Positions 25,357 through 37,444 of a stretch of DNA of 64,000 bases are shown piece by piece. Both the position numbers and the translations under genes were made by a program. The DNA is from Ascoidea asiatica JCM 7603 (lineage: Eukaryota > Fungi > Ascomycota): contig BCKQ01000003.1 of NCBI GenBank assembly GCA_001600695.1, positions 1,121,062-1,185,061 on the forward strand, written 5' to 3'. The notes beneath the pieces are model-generated. The model made no database searches. It saw only the letters and a program-made list of their open reading frames with translations, and had not been told where the DNA came from. Each line of letters begins with the position of its first letter. Within the stretch, counting starts at the first letter, position 1.

Positions 25357-28356
25357 ATGTCTTCAGAAGATTCTGTTTTTATTTCTCAAATTGATTATAC
25401 AATAAATCAATTAGCAAAAAGGCCTGGTTTGGTTTCTTTTGAAAATATATCAAGAATCGCAGAATTATATGGGTTATTTGCGATACCTGATGACTCTCAT
25501 GCTGATTTTGATAGATTAACTTTAGGTGGTCCATTATTATTAATTGATATTGATTTTGATAAATCTTTAAAAAAAGTTCTTAATGTTTCATTATCTTTGG
25601 TTTCTGATAATGATGATCAAGATGTGGAAATGAATTCAGATACTGATTTAAAAAATGTAAATAGCTCAAATGATAAACAAATAATTATTGATAAAATCAG
25701 AAAAAATTTCGAACTTTTAAAGAAAAAAGTATCATTTGCAAATAAATCTCTGGAAAGGTCTGCAAATATAATTTTGTTAAACTCTCTAACTTCTTCACAT
25801 ATACAAACCAAGTGCAGAAAAAGTCATGAAACTTTTGTTGAAAATCCTATAAGATATGATGTATTGAAACTTAATAATTTTGCTCAAAATCTTAAATACT
25901 TATCTACTTTAGATAAACTTTCAGTATCAAAGGCAATTGATGATAATGGAACTTCAGTTTCTGATTCATATGTGGACTTATTCAATTATATGAATGAATT
26001 AGAAATGCTAATATTTATAATAAATAAGAATGAATATAATTTACTATTAAATCAACAAAGACTTCTATTCAACAGACCTAATTATACTACTCCTAATGAT
26101 AGACTTGGTCAAAGCAATCAAAAATTATTCGACATGATGAATGGTTACTTAAAATTGGGAAAATTAGAAAATAATGTCAATAATAAAGTGGGTATATTCA
26201 TGAAATATTGGGAAGATAATAAGTTTGTTAATCGAAGAATTTTTAGAAATGAAAAGGACTCTAAAGAGCAAAAGCTCAAAAACATCCGAAAAAACAACAA
26301 AGATGCGGATAATGACACTGTAATGTCTGATGTTAATGAATCAGAATCAAATAAAAGTAGTTCAAATACTGGTAAATTCAATATTCTTAAAGAACCAGAT
26401 AATGCAATAAATGATTTATTTGGTCTTCAATATAATTTAAAATTCCATAAAGATATAAAATACATTCAATTTTCTATAAAATCTCATGAAAATAATGCTT
26501 TACTTCCATTAACGAAAATTCTTTCATCTCCTTACTCTTCTAATCTTATCAACTCATTTTCCATACTACAGTCAAAACTTATGAAACAACCTTCAAATTT
26601 GAACACGAAAATCGATTTTATAGATATCAAGTTACTTGATCATTTTATTACCCCTTGTAATCATGAAAAACTAAAAGCGTGTTTAAGTTTGAATTTCTTT
26701 CCCAATATATGGATTCCTATTGATTTAATTCCTAATTATTTTGAAAATCATAATCAAAGTTATAAAATCTCAATTGTTTTTGAAAAATCAAAAGATGAAA
26801 ATGAAACTGAATTTCAAGATAACGAAGATTTTCAGGCGTTAGATGATCTGATTAGAAAATCAAGGAAAAGGAATAACACTGATGAAATATTTATTTCCAA
26901 TTATAATGATTTGATAACTAGCGAAGAAGATAAAAAGGAGAACTCAAACAAACCTGGGAATGGAGAAAAGCCTAATGCTGATTCAATTTTTCGTGATTTT
27001 GGTTGTAAAGATGAGAAAAATTATTTTGTCCAACTTCCAAATCCTTCTTATGGCAATGACTTTATAACAGATTCGATAAATAATTCCGCGTTAATTGAAG
27101 AAGAGGAAGAAGATGATGATGAACAAAAAGAAAAAAAAAATAATGATGATGATAATATAAGTTTACTAACTAATAATAATTCTATAATAATGCCAATAAA
27201 GTCTAAAACCATAAATGCTCGATGCAATTATAATTATGGCTTATCTTCAAAATTTCAAAAGCTTAAATCTATGGATATTATATTTGAAGATATTGAATCA
27301 GATAAAAAATCAGCAAGTCCACCAAATGAAGAAATTAGTAATAGTAAAATAGACGATTTTCTAAGAAATTTTGAAAGTTTTTTGATTGATTTAAGGTCTT
27401 GGTGGTTTATGGAAAATCTTATTAAGAGTGTTATTGAAAAATCTTTATTTTCAATGGAAGATAAAACTCAATATTCAACTGATCTAAAAGAATTTATAGG
27501 AAAGGAACATCTGATATCAAAAAGAAGATCCATAGATGAATTAAATGGAGGTAAATTTTCAAATAAAGATAGAAGATTTAGTATTGGAAGTAATTCAAAA
27601 TTAGATTTTTCTTCAAGACCTAGATCATCTTCTTTTTCGAATACACCCATAAGTGTTGGAAAAACAAATTATGATAACAAAAATATAGATTTGGATGGCA
27701 CCTTTGATACATATTCTGAAGAAGGTAAAGGTAATTCTTTAAATGGTGATTTTGAAAATTTAAATGATATAATGAGATCTAGTAGTTCTAGTTTTCATAT
27801 AGGTGGTAATAGAAAAAGAAGAAATTCATTAGTTAAATTGAAAAAAGTTTTAAATTCTACACATTTACATCATGAAAATTTAAAATATCTTTATAATAAT
27901 TTTTTTATAAAATTTTCGATTCTTGATTCATCAATTGATGAATTATATGAAGGATTAAATCCTTTAAGTTCAGGAGAATTAACAATAGATGGAAAATTAT
28001 ATGAATTTAATATAAAAACAAATTTAAATTTATTTGCAGATAAAATTATGAATTCAAGAAATATTATTGGAAATTTAAATAATTTATCAAAAGAAATAAA
28101 TCAAATTAGATTATTTATAAATAATGGAAAAGTTGTTAAATTTGAAGTATTTGAAGGAAATGAGAAATTTTTTAGTGATAGTGGATTAATTAAAAAAATT
28201 GGAATAATTGGTATAAATAATAAAGTTGGATGTGGAATCGGAAATATTAATTTAAATCGAAAAATAGGGAATAAAAAAATTATTAAAATAATGGAAGCAG
28301 TAAATAATACTGAAAGTTTATATTTTATATTAGAGTGGTTACTTAATAATGAATAA
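25357..28356 (+). CDS. MED1: Mediator subunit Med1 (expanded)
   Basis: N-terminal RPGLVSFENI..IAE.YGL, RLTLGG.LLLIDIDF and L..FAQNLKYL..LDKLS...DLF, as in fungal Med1. Confidence 0.75.
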   Translation: MSSEDSVFISQIDYTINQLAKRPGLVSFENISRIAELYGLFAIPDDSHADFDRLTLGGPLLLIDIDFDKSLKKVLNVSLSLVSDNDDQDVEMNSDTDLKNVNSSNDKQIIIDKIRKNFELLKKKVSFANKSLERSANIILLNSLTSSHIQTKCRKSHETFVENPIRYDVLKLNNFAQNLKYLSTLDKLSVSKAIDDNGTSVSDSYVDLFNYMNELEMLIFIINKNEYNLLLNQQRLLFNRPNYTTPNDRLGQSNQKLFDMMNGYLKLGKLENNVNNKVGIFMKYWEDNKFVNRRIFRNEKDSKEQKLKNIRKNNKDADNDTVMSDVNESESNKSSSNTGKFNILKEPDNAINDLFGLQYNLKFHKDIKYIQFSIKSHENNALLPLTKILSSPYSSNLINSFSILQSKLMKQPSNLNTKIDFIDIKLLDHFITPCNHEKLKACLSLNFFPNIWIPIDLIPNYFENHNQSYKISIVFEKSKDENETEFQDNEDFQALDDLIRKSRKRNNTDEIFISNYNDLITSEEDKKENSNKPGNGEKPNADSIFRDFGCKDEKNYFVQLPNPSYGNDFITDSINNSALIEEEEEDDDEQKEKKNNDDDNISLLTNNNSIIMPIKSKTINARCNYNYGLSSKFQKLKSMDIIFEDIESDKKSASPPNEEISNSKIDDFLRNFESFLIDLRSWWFMENLIKSVIEKSLFSMEDKTQYSTDLKEFIGKEHLISKRRSIDELNGGKFSNKDRRFSIGSNSKLDFSSRPRSSSFSNTPISVGKTNYDNKNIDLDGTFDTYSEEGKGNSLNGDFENLNDIMRSSSSSFHIGGNRKRRNSLVKLKKVLNSTHLHHENLKYLYNNFFIKFSILDSSIDELYEGLNPLSSGELTIDGKLYEFNIKTNLNLFADKIMNSRNIIGNLNNLSKEINQIRLFINNGKVVKFEVFEGNEKFFSDSGLIKKIGIIGINNKVGCGIGNINLNRKIGNKKIIKIMEAVNNTESLYFILEWLLNNE

Positions 28357-28481
28357 GTATAATTATATATATATATATTATTATATATTATTATATATTA
28401 TTATTGAGTTTATATACAGCAAAGTTTTGAAAGCAAAAAAAAAAAAAAATTTAATGCAATGAAATGGAATTAGGATATGTA

Positions 28482-29519
<1,038 letters not shown>

Positions 29520-29648
29520 TTAAAATAATTGAATTGGATTAGCTACTTACTTACTTTATTACTTCAATTCACTGAATTGAATTGAATTGAATTGAATTGA
29601 ATTGAATTAATTTCGATCCTTAATTTCAATTTCTAAATTTTAAACGAG

Positions 29649-29656
29649 CCGGGTAA
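29649..29656. promoter_or_regulatory. Reb1-type site upstream of COQ5
   Basis: CCGGGTAA ~210 bp upstream of the ATG, isolated in AT-rich DNA. Confidence 0.55.
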
Positions 29657-31688
29657 GTAAATGAAAACTAGAACCATAAAAGTGGATTCAAATTTAGAAT
29701 TAGATTTAATTTTAATATTAATTTTGATTTTACATTTCATTTGATATTAAAAATAACTTTTTTACTTGATTAACAATAATTTGTTGTTGATGATGATAAA
29801 CAATAAATTGTCCATAAATAAATTGATTAGAGCAAAAAAAAATAACAAAAACAACAAAAATAACAATGGGGGTAAAAAAATAAAGTGATCAAATTAGCTT
29901 AATGATTGTCGTATTAGTACAATTTGTTCAATCAATAATATGAAACAAGAAGTAAATAATATTGAAAAAAAAAGTATCCGAGTTTATTTTTACAAAAAGA
30001 AGCATATCTGAACAATTGTTTGAATATAAATATTATTTAAACATGTTTATAATTCTATATTACTAGTGGTAAGCACATTAGTATTTCAAATATATTTATT
30101 ACTTATCAGTTGGTTATTGTTACCCAAAATTAAATGATTTTTTCATTTATTAAGAATTTCAAATAATATATTTAAATACACCGAATCATTTACTTCTCAA
30201 TTTGAATACTTTTTTTTGCATTCTAGAAGATTTAAAAGAGGTAAAAGTATTATCCCAAGTATTTTATTTGTGTTTATGTCTTTGTCTTTGCTTTCATAGA
30301 ATGGTTTGCTTTATTGTTTTCATATTTTGATTATTATTTTACTTGTACTAAAACAACAAACAAGTTCGAAAATTATAATAAAGAACAATATATTATTACT
30401 ACTTACTTAACTATCCATTGTATTCTAAACCATTGATTGGCTATTAAAAGACTTTGTGGTTAATTTTCTTATATTCGTTGCAAACTGACCCATAAATTAT
30501 TTTCGGGAATAGGTACGGGTCAGTTTCAAAGAAGTGCGGAACTTTTTTGGAAGGAAGAAATTGCTCGCTTCTTGAGACATGGAACAGTGTACTGTTCCAT
30601 GAACAAATTGTGAATGATTTGGTCTCGGATCTAAATTACAGAAACGCAACGCCGTGGTTGTAGCACATAGAAATTCACTAACCTTGGTAATTATTATGCA
30701 ACACACCACATATTATACCTTGATACACAGACACTGAATTGGACCTGTTAAAAATCAGAATTTTTTAATATTTACGTAGTAACTTAAGCTAAACTCAATT
30801 AAAAAAAGATGTTAGTGAAATACAGTAAGGTGGTAAATATAATTGGTGAAACCACCTGATTGATATTCCATGGTTCCGGATGTGGAAACCGGTGTGTTTT
30901 GTCCAATAGAAAGTCTACATCTTCGAGTCTAATAAGGTTATTTGTTGTTAGTGCACTCAAAATAATGTACCGCTTTTGTTTACTTTGAAAAGAGCACAGT
31001 GCATAGAATACATATTTAAACTTTGAACTTGCTGCGGTGTGCGTGTAGATTTTCAAAGTAAGCATGTTCGAGTACTTTATTTCATTGTAAAAAGCGTGTC
31101 GGCCAATATATGGTGATCATTAGGAATTGGGGTGTCGACCTTGAAATTCTGTGCAATTAAAAAATGCAAAATGGAGAGGTCAATCTCTAGAACACTAGAA
31201 CAAATAAAAAAAGTGGCAATACTTTTACTAGCACTAGTTCTACCAGCAGGGAACCAGCGAGCGACTGGCGCTCATATAAATAAGTAACCACGAGAGTAAA
31301 AGGAAGAAAAACAAAAGTGAAAGAAAAAGTAAAAGCAAAAAGAAATGGAGAAACAACCAATTCATTGAAATGAATATGGATAATGCATCCCTTAATGATT
31401 AAAAAGGGTTCCAGTTATTTTTAGCATCAAATCGTTTGGCGTTCACCAATTTCTCCCACTTATAGAATTATTGTGCCATTAACGCTACGCCCAAGTTGTT
31501 TGTAAAATCGATACAAACAAGAAGACCTATGCAAAGAGAAATCTATGATTTTTGTACAAAATTCAAAACTCAAATAACAAAACAAAAATCATATCACATA
31601 CAATATCCCTTTTTGAGACAGGATTATTCCAGTATCTCAACTTGGGGCTATTGGTTCGTATGTAACTGAGTTTGATTTTCTCCCAGAC

Positions 31689-31712
31689 TGGAGCGGGACA
31701 CTGCCCGCTCCA
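31689..31712. repeat. GC-rich 9-bp inverted repeat (CGG-N8-CCG)
   Basis: TGGAGCGGG-acactg-CCCGCTCCA. Confidence 0.9.
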
Positions 31713-32714
31713 CTTCCGACTCGAGTCTTCCATGGACTGTGTGCGGACCAAGATTAAACTAACATTTTATTATTTGATTGATTGATTGATTGATTTCAAG
31801 AAATTCAAGGTGTGGGTTGAAATTGTTCTGTTTTACAAGCTATTTCCCTGGTACTTCCAGATCAGAATCTAAATCAAAATTACTTGAAAATTCTCAAGTA
31901 TCAAAACATTCATATCGATATTAGTAATAGTTTTCATTATTGGCATTGAAAGTCTTTGGCCAATTTATTTTTTATTTTCATTTATTATTTGTTTATTATT
32001 TATTTAATTATTATTATTTTTTCAATCTTTTCATTATTCTATAAAACAAATTGAATTTCTTCTTTCTTTTCTAACAATCTTTATTCTCATCTTCTCATCT
32101 TCTCATCTTCTCATCTTCTATTCATTTATTCACTGATCAACTCCAGAATCACAGCCCTCACATCTATAAATTTGCCTACAAATCCACTGCCTTAGCCTCA
32201 CTACACCCAGCACTCAGCACTACTATTATTACTATTATTACTACTATTACTACTGTTACTATCTCTATTATTACTTGTACCGCACTGTTTCCTTAACTAA
32301 AACTAAAATTAAAACTAAATCCAAAACTAAAAATCTTAAAGCAAAACTGAAAACTTTACTTTTCTTAGCACTTTCCCACTCTTAACTATTAAATATTAAT
32401 AAAAATCTAGCTTTTGGCTTCTTAAAATCAATCATTATCATAAACTTTTTTTCCCCTAATTGAATTCTGATAAATCATCATAAATTTTAACTTATTCAAT
32501 ATCATTCCTAAAATCATCTAAATTTTATATCATCTAAATTTTATATCATCTAAATTTTATATCATTTTATTTATAAATATATAATTATTGATATATAATA
32601 ATCAACTTCTTTCTTATTTCTTGTTTATTATAAATCAAATCAAATTAAATCAAATCAAATTAAATCAAATCAACCAAAATCATATCATATCATATCATTT
32701 CGTATATTATTCGC

Positions 32715-32729
32715 ATGTTTTCAAATTAG
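32715..32729 (+). promoter_or_regulatory. Candidate uORF (MFSN*) upstream of the velvet gene
   Basis: ATG TTT TCA AAT TAG; the only ATG I found on the + strand between ~31735 and 32992. Confidence 0.45.
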
Positions 32730-32992
32730 CTATTTTTCTATCATTATTATCATAATCACATTCAAAATCATAATCATAATCATAATCATCTCTTAATCTT
32801 AGTTAATTAATAAACAATATAATCATCTTCATAATTATAATAATCATAATAATAATATTTTGATTAATAATCATACTTATAACAATATTCTATATATAAT
32901 CTTTTAATATTCAAATAATACTCAAACATACTCAAATTTATTCATATACAAATATACTTATATAAAAAATACATATAAAAAAAAAAAAAGAA

Positions 32993-35815
32993 ATGACAAA
33001 ATATACTAAAGATAAAGTTAAACCAATAAGATCTGATTTTATTTCTTCAATATCTTCAAATTTTAATCTTGAAGTTATTCAACAACCTGAACAAGCAAGA
33101 GTTTGTGAAAAAACAATAACTGCTGCAAGTAGTAGAAGATTAGTTGATCCTCCTCCAATTGTTAAAGTTTCTTTACTTGATCAAAATAATAATGATATAA
33201 TAACCCAATGTCTTGATGCTTTATTTGTAGTTGCAAGTGTTGAAAGATTATCAGATTCTGATATAAATTTTGACTTAAATTATGATACAAGTAATGAATT
33301 AATTGATGATTTAAATAATAATAATAATAATGATTCAAAAATAATATCTTCTATATCTTCTCCATCTTCAATAAATAATTCTCCGAAAACTATTTCAAAT
33401 AATTCTTTAAAGCCACAAATAGCAAATAAAAGAAAAAGAAAATTAAAAAGAATGAAAGAAATTGAATCAAAAAATTTAACAAGTAGTGATATGTTATGTG
33501 GTACAACTGTTTTAACTGTTCAATATATTAAAGGTGATCCAAATTTACAAGCTTTAGCTGTATTCACTAATTTATCTGTAAAATATGAAGGTAATTATAG
33601 ATTATGTTTTAGTTTATATACTATTCAAACTTTAGCTTTAAATAACTTTAAATTATTAACTTCAACTACAAATTCAAATAATCCTAATGGTGGCTCAAAT
33701 GGTTCAACTACAACAACTTCAGGTGTAATGACAATAAATGTATCTCCAATAACAACTGTTAAATCAAATATTTTTGTTGTTTCAACTGCAAAACATTTCA
33801 AAGGTTTATCATCTTCTCCTGCTTTTCATAAAAAATTAAAATCTTGTGGTGTAAGAATTAGAGTAAGAGGCTCAAAACCAAAAGTAGAAGGTGAAGAATA
33901 TGATGACGATGACGATGAAGAAGAACAAGAAGATCTTGAAGATGATGTACCTGAAGATGAAATTGATAATAATCAAATCAATCAAATTATTAAAAATAAT
34001 CAAAATCAAAATAATAATCAAAAATCAAAAATTTCTATTAATGCTATTAATAAGCATATAAATAATAAAAATTTAGAAAAAAATCGAATAAATGAAAAAA
34101 TTTATACTTCAAATTCTAAAAATGATACAAATATTTCTCCAAAGACAAAATTTATTAATACATCAAATACTGATGCTAAAAATAAAGCTCTATCAAAAAA
34201 TACTTTAACTACAAAAAGTTTAAGAGAAGGTAAACCCAAACCTAATTCAACAGGTGATATTGATCCAATTATTACCTCAACAATTTCTGATTATAATATT
34301 TCAGATCAAATTTCAAATAATAAAAATAACAACAATAGTAATAATATCATTAACTCAGGTTTTGATTCTGAATTATCACCAATAATACCAGAATTATATA
34401 ATTCAGCAAGTCAATCACCTTCAATTTTTTGTTCATCTACTATAACTGCAAATTTTCCAGCCTCTTCTTATTCTCATTCACATTCTAATGAATTAGATCC
34501 TTTTACAGGATCAAATTATACCTCAATGTTAAATTCATATAATCGATTATCAAATGAACAAATTAATTCTTTTACAAATCATTTAAAAAATGTTTCAACT
34601 CCTTCAGTTTTTTCAAATGATCAACTGATAACTGATACCTTTCAACCAATTGAATCATCATTAATTCAATCTCCAAATAGTTCAAGAAATGTTAATAATT
34701 CCTCATCAAATAATAATATATCATCTAATGAACAAGATTTAGAAAAATTAATTTTTGAAAAAGTTAATTTTGGTGAAACTAAAGATTCTAGTCCTGTGAT
34801 ATTTTCTGAAAATTTTGGCTCTAATAATTATGATTTTAATATAAATAATACAAATAGTTATGATAGATTAATTAATAAAGATGAAAATAATGAGCATAAT
34901 GAAAATAATGAAAATAATGAAAATAATGATAATAATGATAATAATGATAATAATGATAATGAAAAAAATATTAATTCGAATTCAGAAATAAAATTACCAA
35001 CAACTCCTTTACAACCAAATCTTGGCTCTCAAATATTATTTAATTCAATAAATTCTTTGCCATTATCAAATTTATTATCAAATATTCCAATATCGTCGGG
35101 AATGGAAGCTCAAAATGATAATAATAATATCAATAATGATAATAGTGGTAAAAATGTGAATAATATTAATAATACTTCATTAGGAATTAGAAGTAATAAT
35201 TATTCCAGTGCATTAAGTACAATATCCCTTTTAAACTATCTTAATAGTATCAATAATTCTTTCAATAACAATTCAAATATGCTCAGCAATATTAATAATC
35301 TTGGTAATATCAATAATCTTGCTAATCTTAGTCATCTTAATAATCCAAATCTCCTCAATAATCTTAATAATCTTAATAATCAGAATAATCTTTTCAATGG
35401 ACAAAATATCAACATAAACACTTTAAACAATTTAAGTAGTTTAAATAACCTAAATAATCAAAATAATTTAAGTAGTTTGGAACTGAATAATTTGAATAGT
35501 TTGAATAATCTAAATAATTTTAATATTTCAAATAATTCAAGTAATTTAAATAATCTCAATAATTTAAATAGTTTAAATGTTTTAAATAACTTGAGTAATT
35601 TAAGTAATTTAAGTAACTTGAACAATTCAATCAATTTAAATAATTTGAGCAATTATGTAAATGGAATTGGAGGAAATGTTAATGGAAATGTTAATGGAAA
35701 TATCTCTTCTACTGTTCCTTCTAGTTCAACTATCAATGCTACACCTACTAGTACTGATGATATAAATATCAATTCAAATTTATACCAATTTTTGTCAAAG
35801 GAACAAGGAATTTAA
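32993..35815 (+). CDS. Velvet-domain protein (VeA/VelB/VelC/VosA family) with Asn/Leu-rich C-terminus
   Basis: LEVIQQPEQARVC...RRLVDPPPIV, FTNLSVKYEGNYRLCFSLY and SNIFVV.TAK.F.G...GVRIRVR are the velvet core motifs in the expected order. Confidence 0.88.
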   Translation: MTKYTKDKVKPIRSDFISSISSNFNLEVIQQPEQARVCEKTITAASSRRLVDPPPIVKVSLLDQNNNDIITQCLDALFVVASVERLSDSDINFDLNYDTSNELIDDLNNNNNNDSKIISSISSPSSINNSPKTISNNSLKPQIANKRKRKLKRMKEIESKNLTSSDMLCGTTVLTVQYIKGDPNLQALAVFTNLSVKYEGNYRLCFSLYTIQTLALNNFKLLTSTTNSNNPNGGSNGSTTTTSGVMTINVSPITTVKSNIFVVSTAKHFKGLSSSPAFHKKLKSCGVRIRVRGSKPKVEGEEYDDDDDEEEQEDLEDDVPEDEIDNNQINQIIKNNQNQNNNQKSKISINAINKHINNKNLEKNRINEKIYTSNSKNDTNISPKTKFINTSNTDAKNKALSKNTLTTKSLREGKPKPNSTGDIDPIITSTISDYNISDQISNNKNNNNSNNIINSGFDSELSPIIPELYNSASQSPSIFCSSTITANFPASSYSHSHSNELDPFTGSNYTSMLNSYNRLSNEQINSFTNHLKNVSTPSVFSNDQLITDTFQPIESSLIQSPNSSRNVNNSSSNNNISSNEQDLEKLIFEKVNFGETKDSSPVIFSENFGSNNYDFNINNTNSYDRLINKDENNEHNENNENNENNDNNDNNDNNDNEKNINSNSEIKLPTTPLQPNLGSQILFNSINSLPLSNLLSNIPISSGMEAQNDNNNINNDNSGKNVNNINNTSLGIRSNNYSSALSTISLLNYLNSINNSFNNNSNMLSNINNLGNINNLANLSHLNNPNLLNNLNNLNNQNNLFNGQNININTLNNLSSLNNLNNQNNLSSLELNNLNSLNNLNNFNISNNSSNLNNLNNLNSLNVLNNLSNLSNLSNLNNSINLNNLSNYVNGIGGNVNGNVNGNISSTVPSSSTINATPTSTDDININSNLYQFLSKEQGI

Positions 35816-37278
35816 GTAAGATCTGTGATTTTCAAGACAATATATCAAAAAAAACATTGGAAATCAAAACTAAAAACAAAAAATAAGTGTAATATAAAAT
35901 CGGTTTATTTCCAACAAAACTATCATCAAAAAAATAAATCAATCAAAACATATGACTAAATGAATAATTTATTCGAATCTTTTGTTTCGAATTTCTTTTT
36001 TCTTTTTTTTTTTTTTCAGACTTTTCATTATTAAAAGTTATTACTTTTGCTCTTCAAATCTTATAGTTTATTTAATTATTTTTTTTTTCAATTCTAGTTT
36101 TTTTTATATATATCGAGATCCTTTCAACATACAATTTTTATTTTATTTTTACTCTTCTATATTGTGCTTTTTTTTGGTTTTTTTTTTAATATTTTTTTCA
36201 TTTTTTTGTTATCAACTAATCATTCTAGACATCGTGTTAATAATATCAAGTAATATAAATCATTTATATTCAAATTTTAAATATTTTTTTGCTAAAAATT
36301 CATTTTCAGGTTTGCTTTTGTTAAATCAATCTTCTATATCCAATTTTATATTATCTTATATCTCATTTTTCTCCAAATTTAATTTTTTTAATATGAATCT
36401 ATATGTATGTGTATATTTATAAACATATGCTTTTTTAATTATATTTGATGTGATAATCATTCATCATAAATAATTTTTTCAAAACAATATTCGATGAGCT
36501 TGTATGCTGCAATGTAGCTTATTAAATGTCAATTCCGACCTCAGACCTCAGACCTTTTTTTTTTTTGCTGATGATCTTCAAGAATCCCAATTTGGAAATT
36601 TAAAGTGAGCAAAGAGAGAATGTAGTTAAGTCCTTGTGCTAAGCCACTGACCAATGGCTGCGATCCAATTAGATCGCTCGTATCTTAGAATTAAGAGTTT
36701 CTCAAGTGCAAATCAAGAACACTCCCGTAAAGGTTATTTTCAGGGCTGGGAAAGTTCCCACCGATTGCATGTAGAAGTATACAAAACAAGGCAGGCGTCC
36801 ACGTTTTCTAGTTGAAGTAGCTGCCTAGGCAACATTCGATATTAGCATAGAAACCATGCAGCACCATAGTTGTACCGGGTCAACCAAAAACTGCCCGCAT
36901 ATAAACAAGCAAGCTTTAACGTTACTAAACTTTGTTTCTTGCTTAAGTGATTTTGCCTCTGGGAACCTGATTGCAAGTGACCCAAAACTCCTCAACAGAA
37001 GTCTGAAAAACAAAATCCGGCTACGGATTACAATCCAATAATTTGGGACACTTTACTTCCAGTAGGACAAGTATTCTGGACTTAAAATACATAATTATGG
37101 GTCAAATAATTGTCCTTTCTAAGCCTTGAAAAGTCAACAGGGCTCTAAGGGTAGTAAACGTTCTAAGATGGGAGCATTCTCTCGTAAAAAATGGTGCCTT
37201 TGCAATTAAGCAGCAAAGTCTGTCCTAGCGGCAAACGGAAATGGTGTCTCAGATATCGCAGGGCGTCCTAAGCTAGGA

Positions 37279-37388
37279 GATAACCAGATTAAAGATAATC
37301 AATCAGATTGAATAATGATAATCAGGTTTGTTTATCTTGAGTAATTTAATACTTCTTTTTATATTAGTTTAGTCTATTTCAGAGATAA
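37279..37388. promoter_or_regulatory. Cluster of five GATAA motifs upstream of FUN26
   Basis: GATAA at 37279, 37294, 37317 and 37384; TTATC at 37332. Confidence 0.5.
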
Positions 37389-37444
37389 TTAAGAAGAAAA
37401 ATAACAACAATACTGCTTATAATTTATATCTTTTGCTGTTCGTT

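What the first reader, a model, noticed from the sequence alone, without database searches (positions are those of the whole stretch)
32993..35815. Velvet-domain regulator in a budding-yeast genome
Seen: residues ~25-293 carry all velvet core motifs in order, split by two insertions (one with an NLS-like KRKRKLKRMK). Canonical positions are altered (ARVCE for ARxCG, NLSVK for DLSVR, FKG for FPG), and an acidic tract and a long LNN-repeat tail follow. Known: velvet proteins (VeA, VelB, VelC, VosA) control development and secondary metabolism in filamentous fungi; they are absent from S. cerevisiae and C. albicans and retained in a few yeasts such as Yarrowia. Inference: a divergent retained velvet, possibly the core of an uncharacterised yeast hypha/spore developmental circuit.
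Basis: partly seen in the sequence, partly recalled or inferred. Interest (0 to 1): 0.8.

Follow-up and report, generated by a model that had tools for sequence, protein, structure and literature searches.

The report
VeA-like velvet regulator in Ascoidea yeast
This is a real, intact and strongly conserved velvet-family (NF-kB-like) regulator gene in an Ascoidea-type filamentous budding yeast. It is one of at least 17 velvet-type genes in that genome, and velvet genes are already reported for this yeast group, so it is a sound but fairly ordinary find.

Summary

The genome is an Ascoidea-like budding yeast: the window's Coq5 is 81% identical to that of A. rubescens. A. rubescens carries a syntenic ortholog (Med1-Coq5-velvet, 886 aa). 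The three velvet blocks are 76-88% identical there, while the inserts and tail are only 24-38% identical. The odd residues (E39, K197, K270) and the KRKR.LKR patch are shared, so they are fixed, selected features and not decay.

A careful tree puts the gene in a well-supported yeast VeA-like clade. Its own orthogroup is separate from three paralogs in the same genome.

This is not a lone retained velvet: the genome has at least 17 velvet-type loci. Velvets in part of Saccharomycotina (2024) and a 12-gene expansion in the sister genus Saccharomycopsis (2016) are already published.

The function is untested. No RNA data exist and no LaeA was shown.

The scan has noted velvet genes on other pieces of this genome, and has read this same stretch twice.

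The parts
32993..35815 (+). Whole gene: a 940-aa velvet-family protein with no intron. The start codon is conserved with the A. rubescens ortholog.
33065..33871 (+). Velvet domain, residues 25-293 (Pfam PF11754, profile positions 2-235 of 237). The predicted beta-sandwich has pLDDT above 90 in the core.
33062..33250 (+). Block 1 (motif 1), residues 24-86. It is 87% identical to A. rubescens, with pN 0.08 against pS 0.68.
33104..33142 (+). Loop A equivalent, residues 38-50 (CEKTITAASSRRL). R48/R49 align with VosA R41/K42. No basic residue aligns with the K37/K39 positions, and K40 is the only other basic residue in the loop. The loop is identical in A. rubescens.
33251..33424 (+). Variable insert 1, residues 87-144. 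It is S/N-rich, has low model confidence and is 38% identical to A. rubescens.
33428..33457 (+). Basic patch KRKRKLKRMK, residues 146-155, a candidate nuclear localisation signal. It lies within a predicted helix (142-160) just before the L-x-G strand. It is conserved in A. rubescens, and a basic cluster sits at this place in 12 of 18 yeast-clade velvets.
33473..33631 (+). Block 2 (motif 2), residues 161-213, including NLSVKYEG. Together with the basic patch it is 88% identical to A. rubescens, with pN 0.06.
33632..33748 (+). Variable insert 2, residues 214-252. It is N/T/S/G-rich and 24% identical to A. rubescens.
33749..33871 (+). Block 3 (motif 3), residues 253-293, with FKG in place of FPG. 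It is 76% identical to A. rubescens.
33887..33967 (+). Acidic tract, residues 299-325. It is not conserved in A. rubescens, which has an N/D-rich stretch there.
33983..35812 (+). Long N/S-rich low-complexity tail, residues 331-940. It is 26% identical to A. rubescens (measured over residues 294-940), but a tail of similar length is kept there. The gene's two CTG codons (aa 545 and 831) lie here.
35422..35654 (+). LNN/NNL repeat array: 9-nt period, about 25 copies.
29442..32992. A 3.55-kb intergenic region shared with the divergently transcribed COQ5 gene. The equivalent region is 5.9 kb in A. rubescens. No conserved non-coding block was found. Positions 31977-32026 were left out of all searches.
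25357..29441 (.). Synteny anchors: MED1 (25357-28356, +) and COQ5 (28482-29441, -). The same gene order lies next to the velvet ortholog in A. rubescens.

Best explanation
The gene encodes a functional, selectively maintained velvet-family regulator of the yeast VeA-like class, in an Ascoidea-type filamentous budding yeast. The points below separate what is shown from what is inferred.

Shown:
- An N-terminal velvet domain with the VosA/VelB/VeA beta-sandwich fold.
- Strong purifying selection on its three core blocks and on a basic patch.
- A syntenic ortholog in A. rubescens.
- Membership of a well-supported yeast clade, and of an orthogroup distinct from its paralogs in the same genome.

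Inferred by analogy with Aspergillus VeA/VelB/VosA:
- The protein enters the nucleus, with KRKRKLKRMK as the likely localisation signal.
- It dimerises through the velvet domain with itself or with one of the many other velvet paralogs, including the VelB-like ones.
- It contacts DNA through loop A (R48/R49), possibly helped by the adjacent basic helix.
- It regulates developmental gene sets such as hyphal growth or sporulation. The acidic tract and the long disordered N-rich tail would serve as an activation or interaction region.

It is one node in a large velvet network, not a single master switch.
For: - Family: Pfam Velvet, 102 bits, E 6.5e-29. PDB sequence matches are VeA 2.2e-11, VosA 2.4e-8 and VelB 1.2e-5.
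- Ortholog: a syntenic A. rubescens gene with conserved blocks, with pN 0.06-0.08 against saturated pS in blocks 1 and 2.
- Fixed substitutions: E39, K197, K270, N193 and the basic patch are all shared by the two species.
- Tree: mine plus A. rubescens 100/99; plus P0001-4 and P0007 99/92; the whole yeast clade 100/98.
- Basic cluster: present at the same place in 12 of 18 yeast-clade proteins and in 0 of 24 others.
- Loop A: R48/R49 correspond to VosA R41/K42, residues needed for DNA binding.
- Possible partners: other velvet genes exist in the genome.
Against: - No expression data exist: no RNA runs for this organism.
- No functional study of any Saccharomycotina velvet was found.
- Loop A lacks basic residues at the VosA K37/K39 positions, the most important ones for VosA DNA binding. 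Direct DNA binding is therefore uncertain.
- No LaeA was shown in the genome. The best Methyltransf_23 hit is Coq3, and the literature reports LaeA absent from Saccharomycotina. The classical VeA-LaeA mechanism probably does not apply.
- My trees do not show that the yeast clade is sister to Pezizomycotina VeA.
- The tail is compositionally typical of a 22% GC genome and is barely conserved, so any role for it is speculative.
Confidence: 0.75

Rival explanations
1. The velvet fold is kept but sequence-specific DNA binding is lost or weakened. The protein would act mainly as a non-DNA-binding dimer partner or titrator that modulates other velvet paralogs.
For: Loop A has only K40, R48 and R49. 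No basic residue aligns with VosA K37/K39, and the K37A/K39A double mutant of VosA cannot bind DNA. Several near-invariant positions are replaced (G39E, R197K, P270K, E210T, F189A). Many potential partners exist in the genome.
Against: R48/R49 are conserved. An extra, strongly basic helix under purifying selection sits next to the domain. The replaced positions are conservative (R to K) or are shared across the orthogroup, which points to altered function and not to loss of function.
Confidence: 0.2
2. One reading: a single divergent velvet retained from the ancestor, forming the core of an otherwise velvet-free yeast developmental circuit.
For: The gene is a real velvet and is conserved.
Against: At least 17 velvet-type loci occur in the same genome, ten of them well above the Pfam cut-off. 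Three closer paralogs exist. Large velvet families are published for the sister genus.
Confidence: 0.04
3. A decaying copy: the altered canonical residues and low-complexity inserts would mark a paralog drifting towards loss of function.
For: The Pfam score (102 bits) is lower than for the best paralogs (about 190-220 bits). There are many substitutions at conserved columns and a long repeat-rich tail.
Against: The 940-aa ORF is intact. The syntenic ortholog is intact. The core blocks are 76-88% identical while synonymous sites are saturated (pS 0.54-0.78, pN 0.06-0.19). The odd residues are identical in both species. The locus is held in two independent studies' DNA runs.
Confidence: 0.02
4. 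Contaminant or horizontally acquired gene from a filamentous fungus, not a native yeast gene.
For: Some reviews describe velvet as absent from Saccharomycotina.
Against: GC content and N-rich composition match the surrounding window. Synteny with A. rubescens is conserved. The nearest relatives are other Saccharomycotina, namely Saccharomycopsis and Babjeviella.
Confidence: 0.01

Closest known systems
VeA (Aspergillus nidulans velvet protein A; PDB 9i2s velvet domain) and the published 'Sac-VeA' clade of Saccharomycotina velvets (PMC10845976)
   Different: Identity to Pezizomycotina VeA is only about 30%. The protein carries a basic KRKRK helix before motif 2 that Pezizomycotina VeA lacks. It has E39, K197 and K270 at near-invariant G, R and P positions. 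No LaeA partner was shown in the genome. A sister relation to Pezizomycotina VeA is not resolved by my trees.
Saccharomycopsis velvet family (S. crataegensis 'Velvet domain-containing proteins' XP_064850504, XP_064850872, XP_064850873; the 12-gene family reported in S. fibuligera, PMC5106798)
   Same: They belong to the same order-level yeast lineage and the same yeast VeA-like clade (100/98 support). They share the conserved N-terminal leader before the domain and a basic cluster before motif 2. The velvet family is expanded in both genomes.
   Different: The named S. crataegensis proteins fall in the other subgroup, together with this genome's three paralogs. My gene groups with unnamed proteins (P0001-4 and P0007; one is from NCBI assembly GCA_000960405.1) at 34-37% identity in the domain alignment (40-44% over the stretches HMMER matched). 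Those relatives are also much shorter (394-675 aa).
Ascoidea rubescens DSM 1968 syntenic gene (KV454476.1; L018:1458-4118, minus strand; 886 aa)
   Same: It is the direct ortholog. It has the same Med1-Coq5-velvet gene order, an identical first 15 residues, an identical loop A and the same odd residues. Its Pfam Velvet match is E 4.7e-27.
   Different: The inserts and tail are largely unalignable and there is no acidic tract. No Pfam hit is on record for it in the precomputed table, and it was not returned by the large protein search.
VosA and VelB (PDB 4n6q, 4n6r) and the Rel-homology domain of NF-kB
   Different: Sequence similarity is lower than to VeA. No basic residue aligns with VosA K37/K39. 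This genome's VelB-like genes form a separate clade.

Membership tests
Velvet family (Pfam PF11754) | Match to the Velvet profile above the curated cut-off, covering the whole domain | tested here: met
   102.1 bits against a cut-off of 25, E 6.5e-29, profile positions 2-235 of 237. The own-genome scan gives 106.5 bits for this locus.
Velvet family (Pfam PF11754) | Three characteristic motifs in order, with a variable region between motifs 1 and 2 (PMC10845976) | tested here: met
   Blocks at residues 24-86, 161-213 and 253-293 align to motifs 1-3, with substitutions at E39, K197 and K270.
Velvet family (Pfam PF11754) | Velvet / Rel-homology-like beta-sandwich fold | tested here: met
Velvet family (Pfam PF11754) | Basic loop A residues needed for DNA binding (VosA K37, K39, R41, K42) | tested here: inconclusive
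   R48/R49 match R41/K42. No basic residue aligns with the K37/K39 positions. K40 is the only other basic residue in the loop.
Velvet family (Pfam PF11754) | Homo- or heterodimerisation with other velvet proteins, and DNA binding | not testable with these tools
VeA subfamily | Groups with VeA, and not with VelB, VelC or VosA, in a phylogeny with reference sequences | tested here: inconclusive
   VeA is the best PDB sequence match, and most non-yeast top hits are of VeA length. In the trees, however, the 18-member yeast clade sits on its own starred branch with no resolved sister. No VelC or VosA references could be included.
VeA subfamily | N-terminal velvet domain with a long C-terminal disordered region | tested here: met
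   The domain covers residues 25-293 of 940. The tail is low-complexity.
VeA subfamily | Works with the methyltransferase LaeA (VelB-VeA-LaeA complex) | tested here: inconclusive
   The generic Methyltransf_23 scan gives Coq3 and other non-LaeA methyltransferase matches as its best hits. No LaeA reference sequence was available. The literature reports LaeA absent from Saccharomycotina.

The most novel reading that the evidence does not exclude
This Ascoidea/Saccharomycopsis orthogroup could be a neofunctionalised velvet. It is defined by V37, L50, A189, N193 and loss of the FPG proline (FKG in the two Ascoidea proteins, FDG in the other members), and its members also carry a basic cluster before motif 2 (a feature seen in 12 of 18 yeast-clade proteins). 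Its altered loop A and extra basic helix, both under strong purifying selection, would give it a new DNA or partner specificity. It would act inside a velvet network of more than 17 members that lacks LaeA and controls hyphal or ascus development in filamentous budding yeasts. That would amount to an independent elaboration of NF-kB-like regulation in Saccharomycotina.
Probability: 0.25. Interest if true: 0.55.

Novelty: new member of a known kind. Interest (0 to 1): 0.3.

Why it matters
Velvet proteins are the fungal counterparts of NF-kB. They are master regulators of development and secondary metabolism in moulds, and they are often still described as absent from budding yeasts (for example in a 2026 review).

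This gene and its many paralogs show that at least the Ascoidea/Saccharomycopsis lineage keeps and has expanded the family, apparently without LaeA. If studied, these genes could show how velvet networks work without LaeA, and what controls the yeast-to-hypha or sporulation programmes of filamentous budding yeasts.

However, presence in Saccharomycotina (2024) and the Saccharomycopsis expansion (2016) are already published. This single gene therefore adds a well-documented member and not a new principle.

Tried and rejected
- **Word-index protein searches.** Two searches with the gene (residues 1-320, then 19-95) found nothing. Low-complexity words swamped the first, and the 77-residue region was too short for the second. 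This says nothing about absence of relatives; the exhaustive HMMER search then found 356.
- **Exact look-up of the protein in public assemblies.** Not on record.
- **Exact look-up of the A. rubescens ortholog.** Not in the collection.
- **Read laying on 31700-36200.** No read-level check of the ORF in the second DNA data set was possible. No letters of 31977-32026 were sent to any tool afterwards; the later work ran beside them (29442-31976 and 32027 onwards).
- **RNA evidence.** No RNA runs exist for this organism.
- **Conserved non-coding blocks around the gene versus A. rubescens.** Only AT-rich low-complexity matches.
- **LaeA.** The generic Methyltransf_23 scan finds Coq3 and other non-LaeA methyltransferase matches. 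This is inconclusive because no LaeA reference was to hand.
- **Synteny with the GCA_000960405.1 relative (P0004).** Not conserved: its neighbours are a GCS gene and a Uso1 gene. The organism of that assembly could not be identified.
- **Species lists in the 2024 paper's supplements.** No Ascoidea or Saccharomycopsis names were found.
- **Rfam on 32027-37432.** No RNA family.
- **Rejected readings.** Pseudogene, contaminant or horizontal transfer, and 'single retained velvet' (see the rival explanations).
Full report
**1. The observation**

No other ORF of 80 aa or more overlaps it on either strand. No Rfam family lies in 32027-37432.

Pfam's Velvet model (PF11754) matches residues 25-293 at 102.1 bits (cut-off 25), E 6.5e-29, covering profile positions 2-235 of 237. 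A sequence search of solved structures finds only velvet domains: VeA 9i2s (E 2.2e-11), VosA 4n6q (2.4e-8) and VelB 4n6r_B (1.2e-5).

- block 1: residues 24-86
- variable S/N-rich insert: residues 87-144
- basic patch KRKRKLKRMK: residues 146-155
- block 2: residues 161-213
- second N/T/S/G-rich insert: residues 214-252
- block 3: residues 253-293

In an 84-sequence velvet alignment the protein departs from near-invariant residues at E39 (G in 95%), K197 (R in 96%) and K270 (P in 94%). It also departs at N193, A189, T210 and F278. The acidic tract (residues 299-325) and the LNN repeat tail (9-nt period, about 25 copies, window 35422-35654) are also there. The only caveat is that a variable stretch between motifs 1 and 2 is the rule in velvet domains (PMC10845976).

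**2. Fold**

An AlphaFold2 model of residues 1-300, built on an alignment of 84 velvet domains, has mean pLDDT 79.4 and pTM 0.72. The beta-sandwich core is above 90, the two inserts are low, and a helix is predicted over residues 142-160, which includes the basic patch.

The Rel-homology-like velvet fold is therefore confirmed. The three velvet structures are tied, so the fold does not assign a subfamily.

**3. Whose genome**

The window is 22% GC and gene-dense with long uninterrupted ORFs. The neighbours are ordinary yeast genes: MED1, COQ5, a nucleoside transporter, an ETR1-like reductase, a LicD/MNN4-like gene and GWT1.

The window's Coq5 is closest to Ascoidea rubescens DSM 1968 (81% identity, 486 bits). 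The next named hit is Saccharomycopsis crataegensis at 66-72%, followed by other Saccharomycotina. Gene order is also shared with A. rubescens.

So this is an Ascoidea-like filamentous budding yeast that is not A. rubescens itself. Earlier notes of this scan call it 'almost certainly A. asiatica'. I can confirm only the genus-level placement.

**4. The ortholog and selection**

On A. rubescens scaffold KV454476.1, MED1 and COQ5 are followed, after 5.9 kb, by an 886-aa gene in the position and orientation of this gene. It carries a Pfam Velvet match of E 4.7e-27.

| Region (residues) | Amino-acid identity to A. rubescens |
|---|---|
| First 86 residues, including block 1 | 87% (first 15 residues identical) |
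| Basic patch plus block 2 (145-213) | 88% |
| Block 3 (253-293) | 76% |
| Insert 1 (87-144) | 38% |
| Insert 2 (214-252) | 24% |
| Tail (294-940) | 26% |

Synonymous sites are saturated (pS 0.54-0.78 in the blocks). The non-synonymous differences are pN 0.08 in block 1, 0.06 in the basic patch plus block 2, and 0.19 in block 3.

Loop A, E39, N193, K197, K270 and the KRKR.LKR patch are the same in both species. The 'altered canonical positions' are therefore fixed, selected characters of this orthogroup and not signs of decay.

The gene has only two CTG codons, both in the tail (aa 545 and 831). The uncertain decoding of CUG in this yeast group (my own knowledge) therefore does not touch the domain.

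**5. Relatives and place in the family**

Two word-index searches failed for technical reasons, so I ran the exhaustive HMMER search. It found 356 proteins at E of 1e-3 or better, 35 at 1e-10 or better, and none at 1e-30 or better.

The best hits (E 1e-24 to 8e-18, 38-44% identity over the matched stretches) share even the short leader before the domain. Where they are named, they are Saccharomycotina:
- three 'Velvet domain-containing proteins' of S. crataegensis
- one protein of Babjeviella inositovora
- an unannotated NCBI assembly, GCA_000960405.1

After these come many proteins of 570-610 aa. The two that I read (P0009 and P0010) show the typical Pezizomycotina VeA N-terminus.

A careful IQ-TREE analysis of 42 domains gives these supports:
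- mine plus the A. rubescens gene: 100/99
- that pair plus P0001-4 and P0007: 99/92
- all 18 yeast VeA-like proteins together: 100/98

The three closest paralogs in the same genome (C4:559k, C8:407k and the degenerate C3:574k) fall in the other subgroup, with the named S. crataegensis proteins. Derived states shared by the orthogroup support the grouping: V37, L50, A189, N193 and loss of the FPG proline.

Whether the yeast clade is the sister of Pezizomycotina VeA is not resolved by my trees, and I had no VelC or VosA references. The published classification does recognise a 'Sac-VeA' clade.

**6. A lineage feature: the basic patch**

In the 30 residues before the invariant L-x-G strand, 12 of 18 yeast-clade proteins have at least 4 K/R in some 10-residue window. 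This gene has 8 and its A. rubescens ortholog 7. None of the 24 other velvets does, including 12 Pezizomycotina VeA-type proteins.

The 2024 survey found no nuclear localisation signal in its clade consensus sequences. A conserved, strongly basic, helix-forming patch is a reasonable candidate for a nuclear localisation signal or an extra DNA contact. This is inference only.

**7. Not a lone velvet**

The Pfam scan of the whole 20.3-Mb assembly finds ten loci far above the cut-off plus several weak ones. A broader profile adds more, including a small group on contig 20. Together these make at least 17 distinct loci, with a loose cluster on contig 4 at 419-559 kb. Earlier notes of the scan estimate about 19-32.

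The genome has VelB-like genes that could serve as partners. A generic methyltransferase scan gives Coq3 as its best hit and no evident LaeA. A 2026 review reports LaeA absent from Saccharomycotina.

**8. What is already known**

- PMC5106798 (2016) reports 12 velvet genes in Saccharomycopsis fibuligera as a notable expansion.
- I found no functional study of any budding-yeast velvet.
- At least one recent review still states that the family is absent from Saccharomycotina.

**9. How it most likely works**

Shown: a velvet fold, purifying selection, orthology, and membership of the yeast clade.

Inferred from Aspergillus VosA/VelB/VeA (PMC3876986):
- nuclear import, probably through residues 146-155
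- dimerisation through the velvet domain with itself or another velvet
- major-groove contact through loop A

In loop A, R48/R49 match VosA R41/K42, but no basic residue aligns with the critical K37/K39 positions. A role as a modulating, weakly DNA-binding partner is therefore a serious rival (about 0.2).

The acidic tract and the N-rich tail may act in activation or interaction. They are barely conserved and fit the AT-rich composition of the genome. The long upstream region (3.55 kb here, 5.9 kb in A. rubescens) would fit a highly regulated gene, but no conserved block was found in it.

**10. Limits**

- No RNA runs exist for this organism.
- The gene has no intron, so no spliced model was needed.

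**11. Verdict**

This is a genuine, intact, selectively maintained velvet regulator of the yeast VeA-like class, with a public though unnamed ortholog. It sits in a genome and a lineage where an expanded velvet family is already on record. It is a new member of a known kind, and interest is modest at 0.3. The conserved basic helix and the fixed changes at near-invariant positions are the only features that might repay experiments.

Noticed in passing
G000 contigs C4:419-559 kb, C20:185-210 kb, C1:656 kb, C7:518 and 622 kb, C8:407 kb, C12:462 kb, C6:912 kb, C3:574 kb, C4:1315 kb: At least 17 velvet-type loci occur in this 20.3-Mb genome. There is a loose cluster of four on contig 4 and a group of weak, short ones on contig 20.
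   Followed up: partly
L018:1458-4118 (A. rubescens KV454476.1, minus strand): The A. rubescens ortholog has no Pfam family on record in the precomputed table, although hmmscan gives Velvet at E 4.7e-27. It was not returned by the exhaustive protein search, and its exact sequence is not in the collection. The reason is unclear.
   Followed up: partly
L012:2427-3368 (-) = G000:C3:573.9-574.9 kb: A 313-aa paralog of the same subfamily keeps motif 1 and part of motif 2. It lacks the basic patch, the L-x-G strand and the FPG motif, and falls below the Pfam cut-off (20 bits). It may be a degenerate or truncated velvet.
   Followed up: partly
L006:1471-3795 (+) = G000:C1:656.5-658.9 kb: A VelB-like velvet gene of 775 aa has its domain split by an insertion of roughly 500 residues between motif 1 and motif 2 (Pfam stretch 11-743).
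   Followed up: no
window 29442-32992: The intergenic region between the divergent COQ5 and velvet genes is 3.55 kb (5.9 kb in A. rubescens), which is long for this compact genome. No sequence block is conserved between the two species.
   Followed up: partly
literature (PMC13006574 versus PMC10845976 and PMC5106798): A 2026 review still states that velvet proteins are absent from Saccharomycotina. This contradicts the 2024 survey, the 2016 Saccharomycopsis genome paper and the present data.
   Followed up: yes
The same protein recurs in many public sequencing runs. Its neighbours (a GCS gene and a Uso1 gene) are not syntenic with this window.
   Followed up: partly
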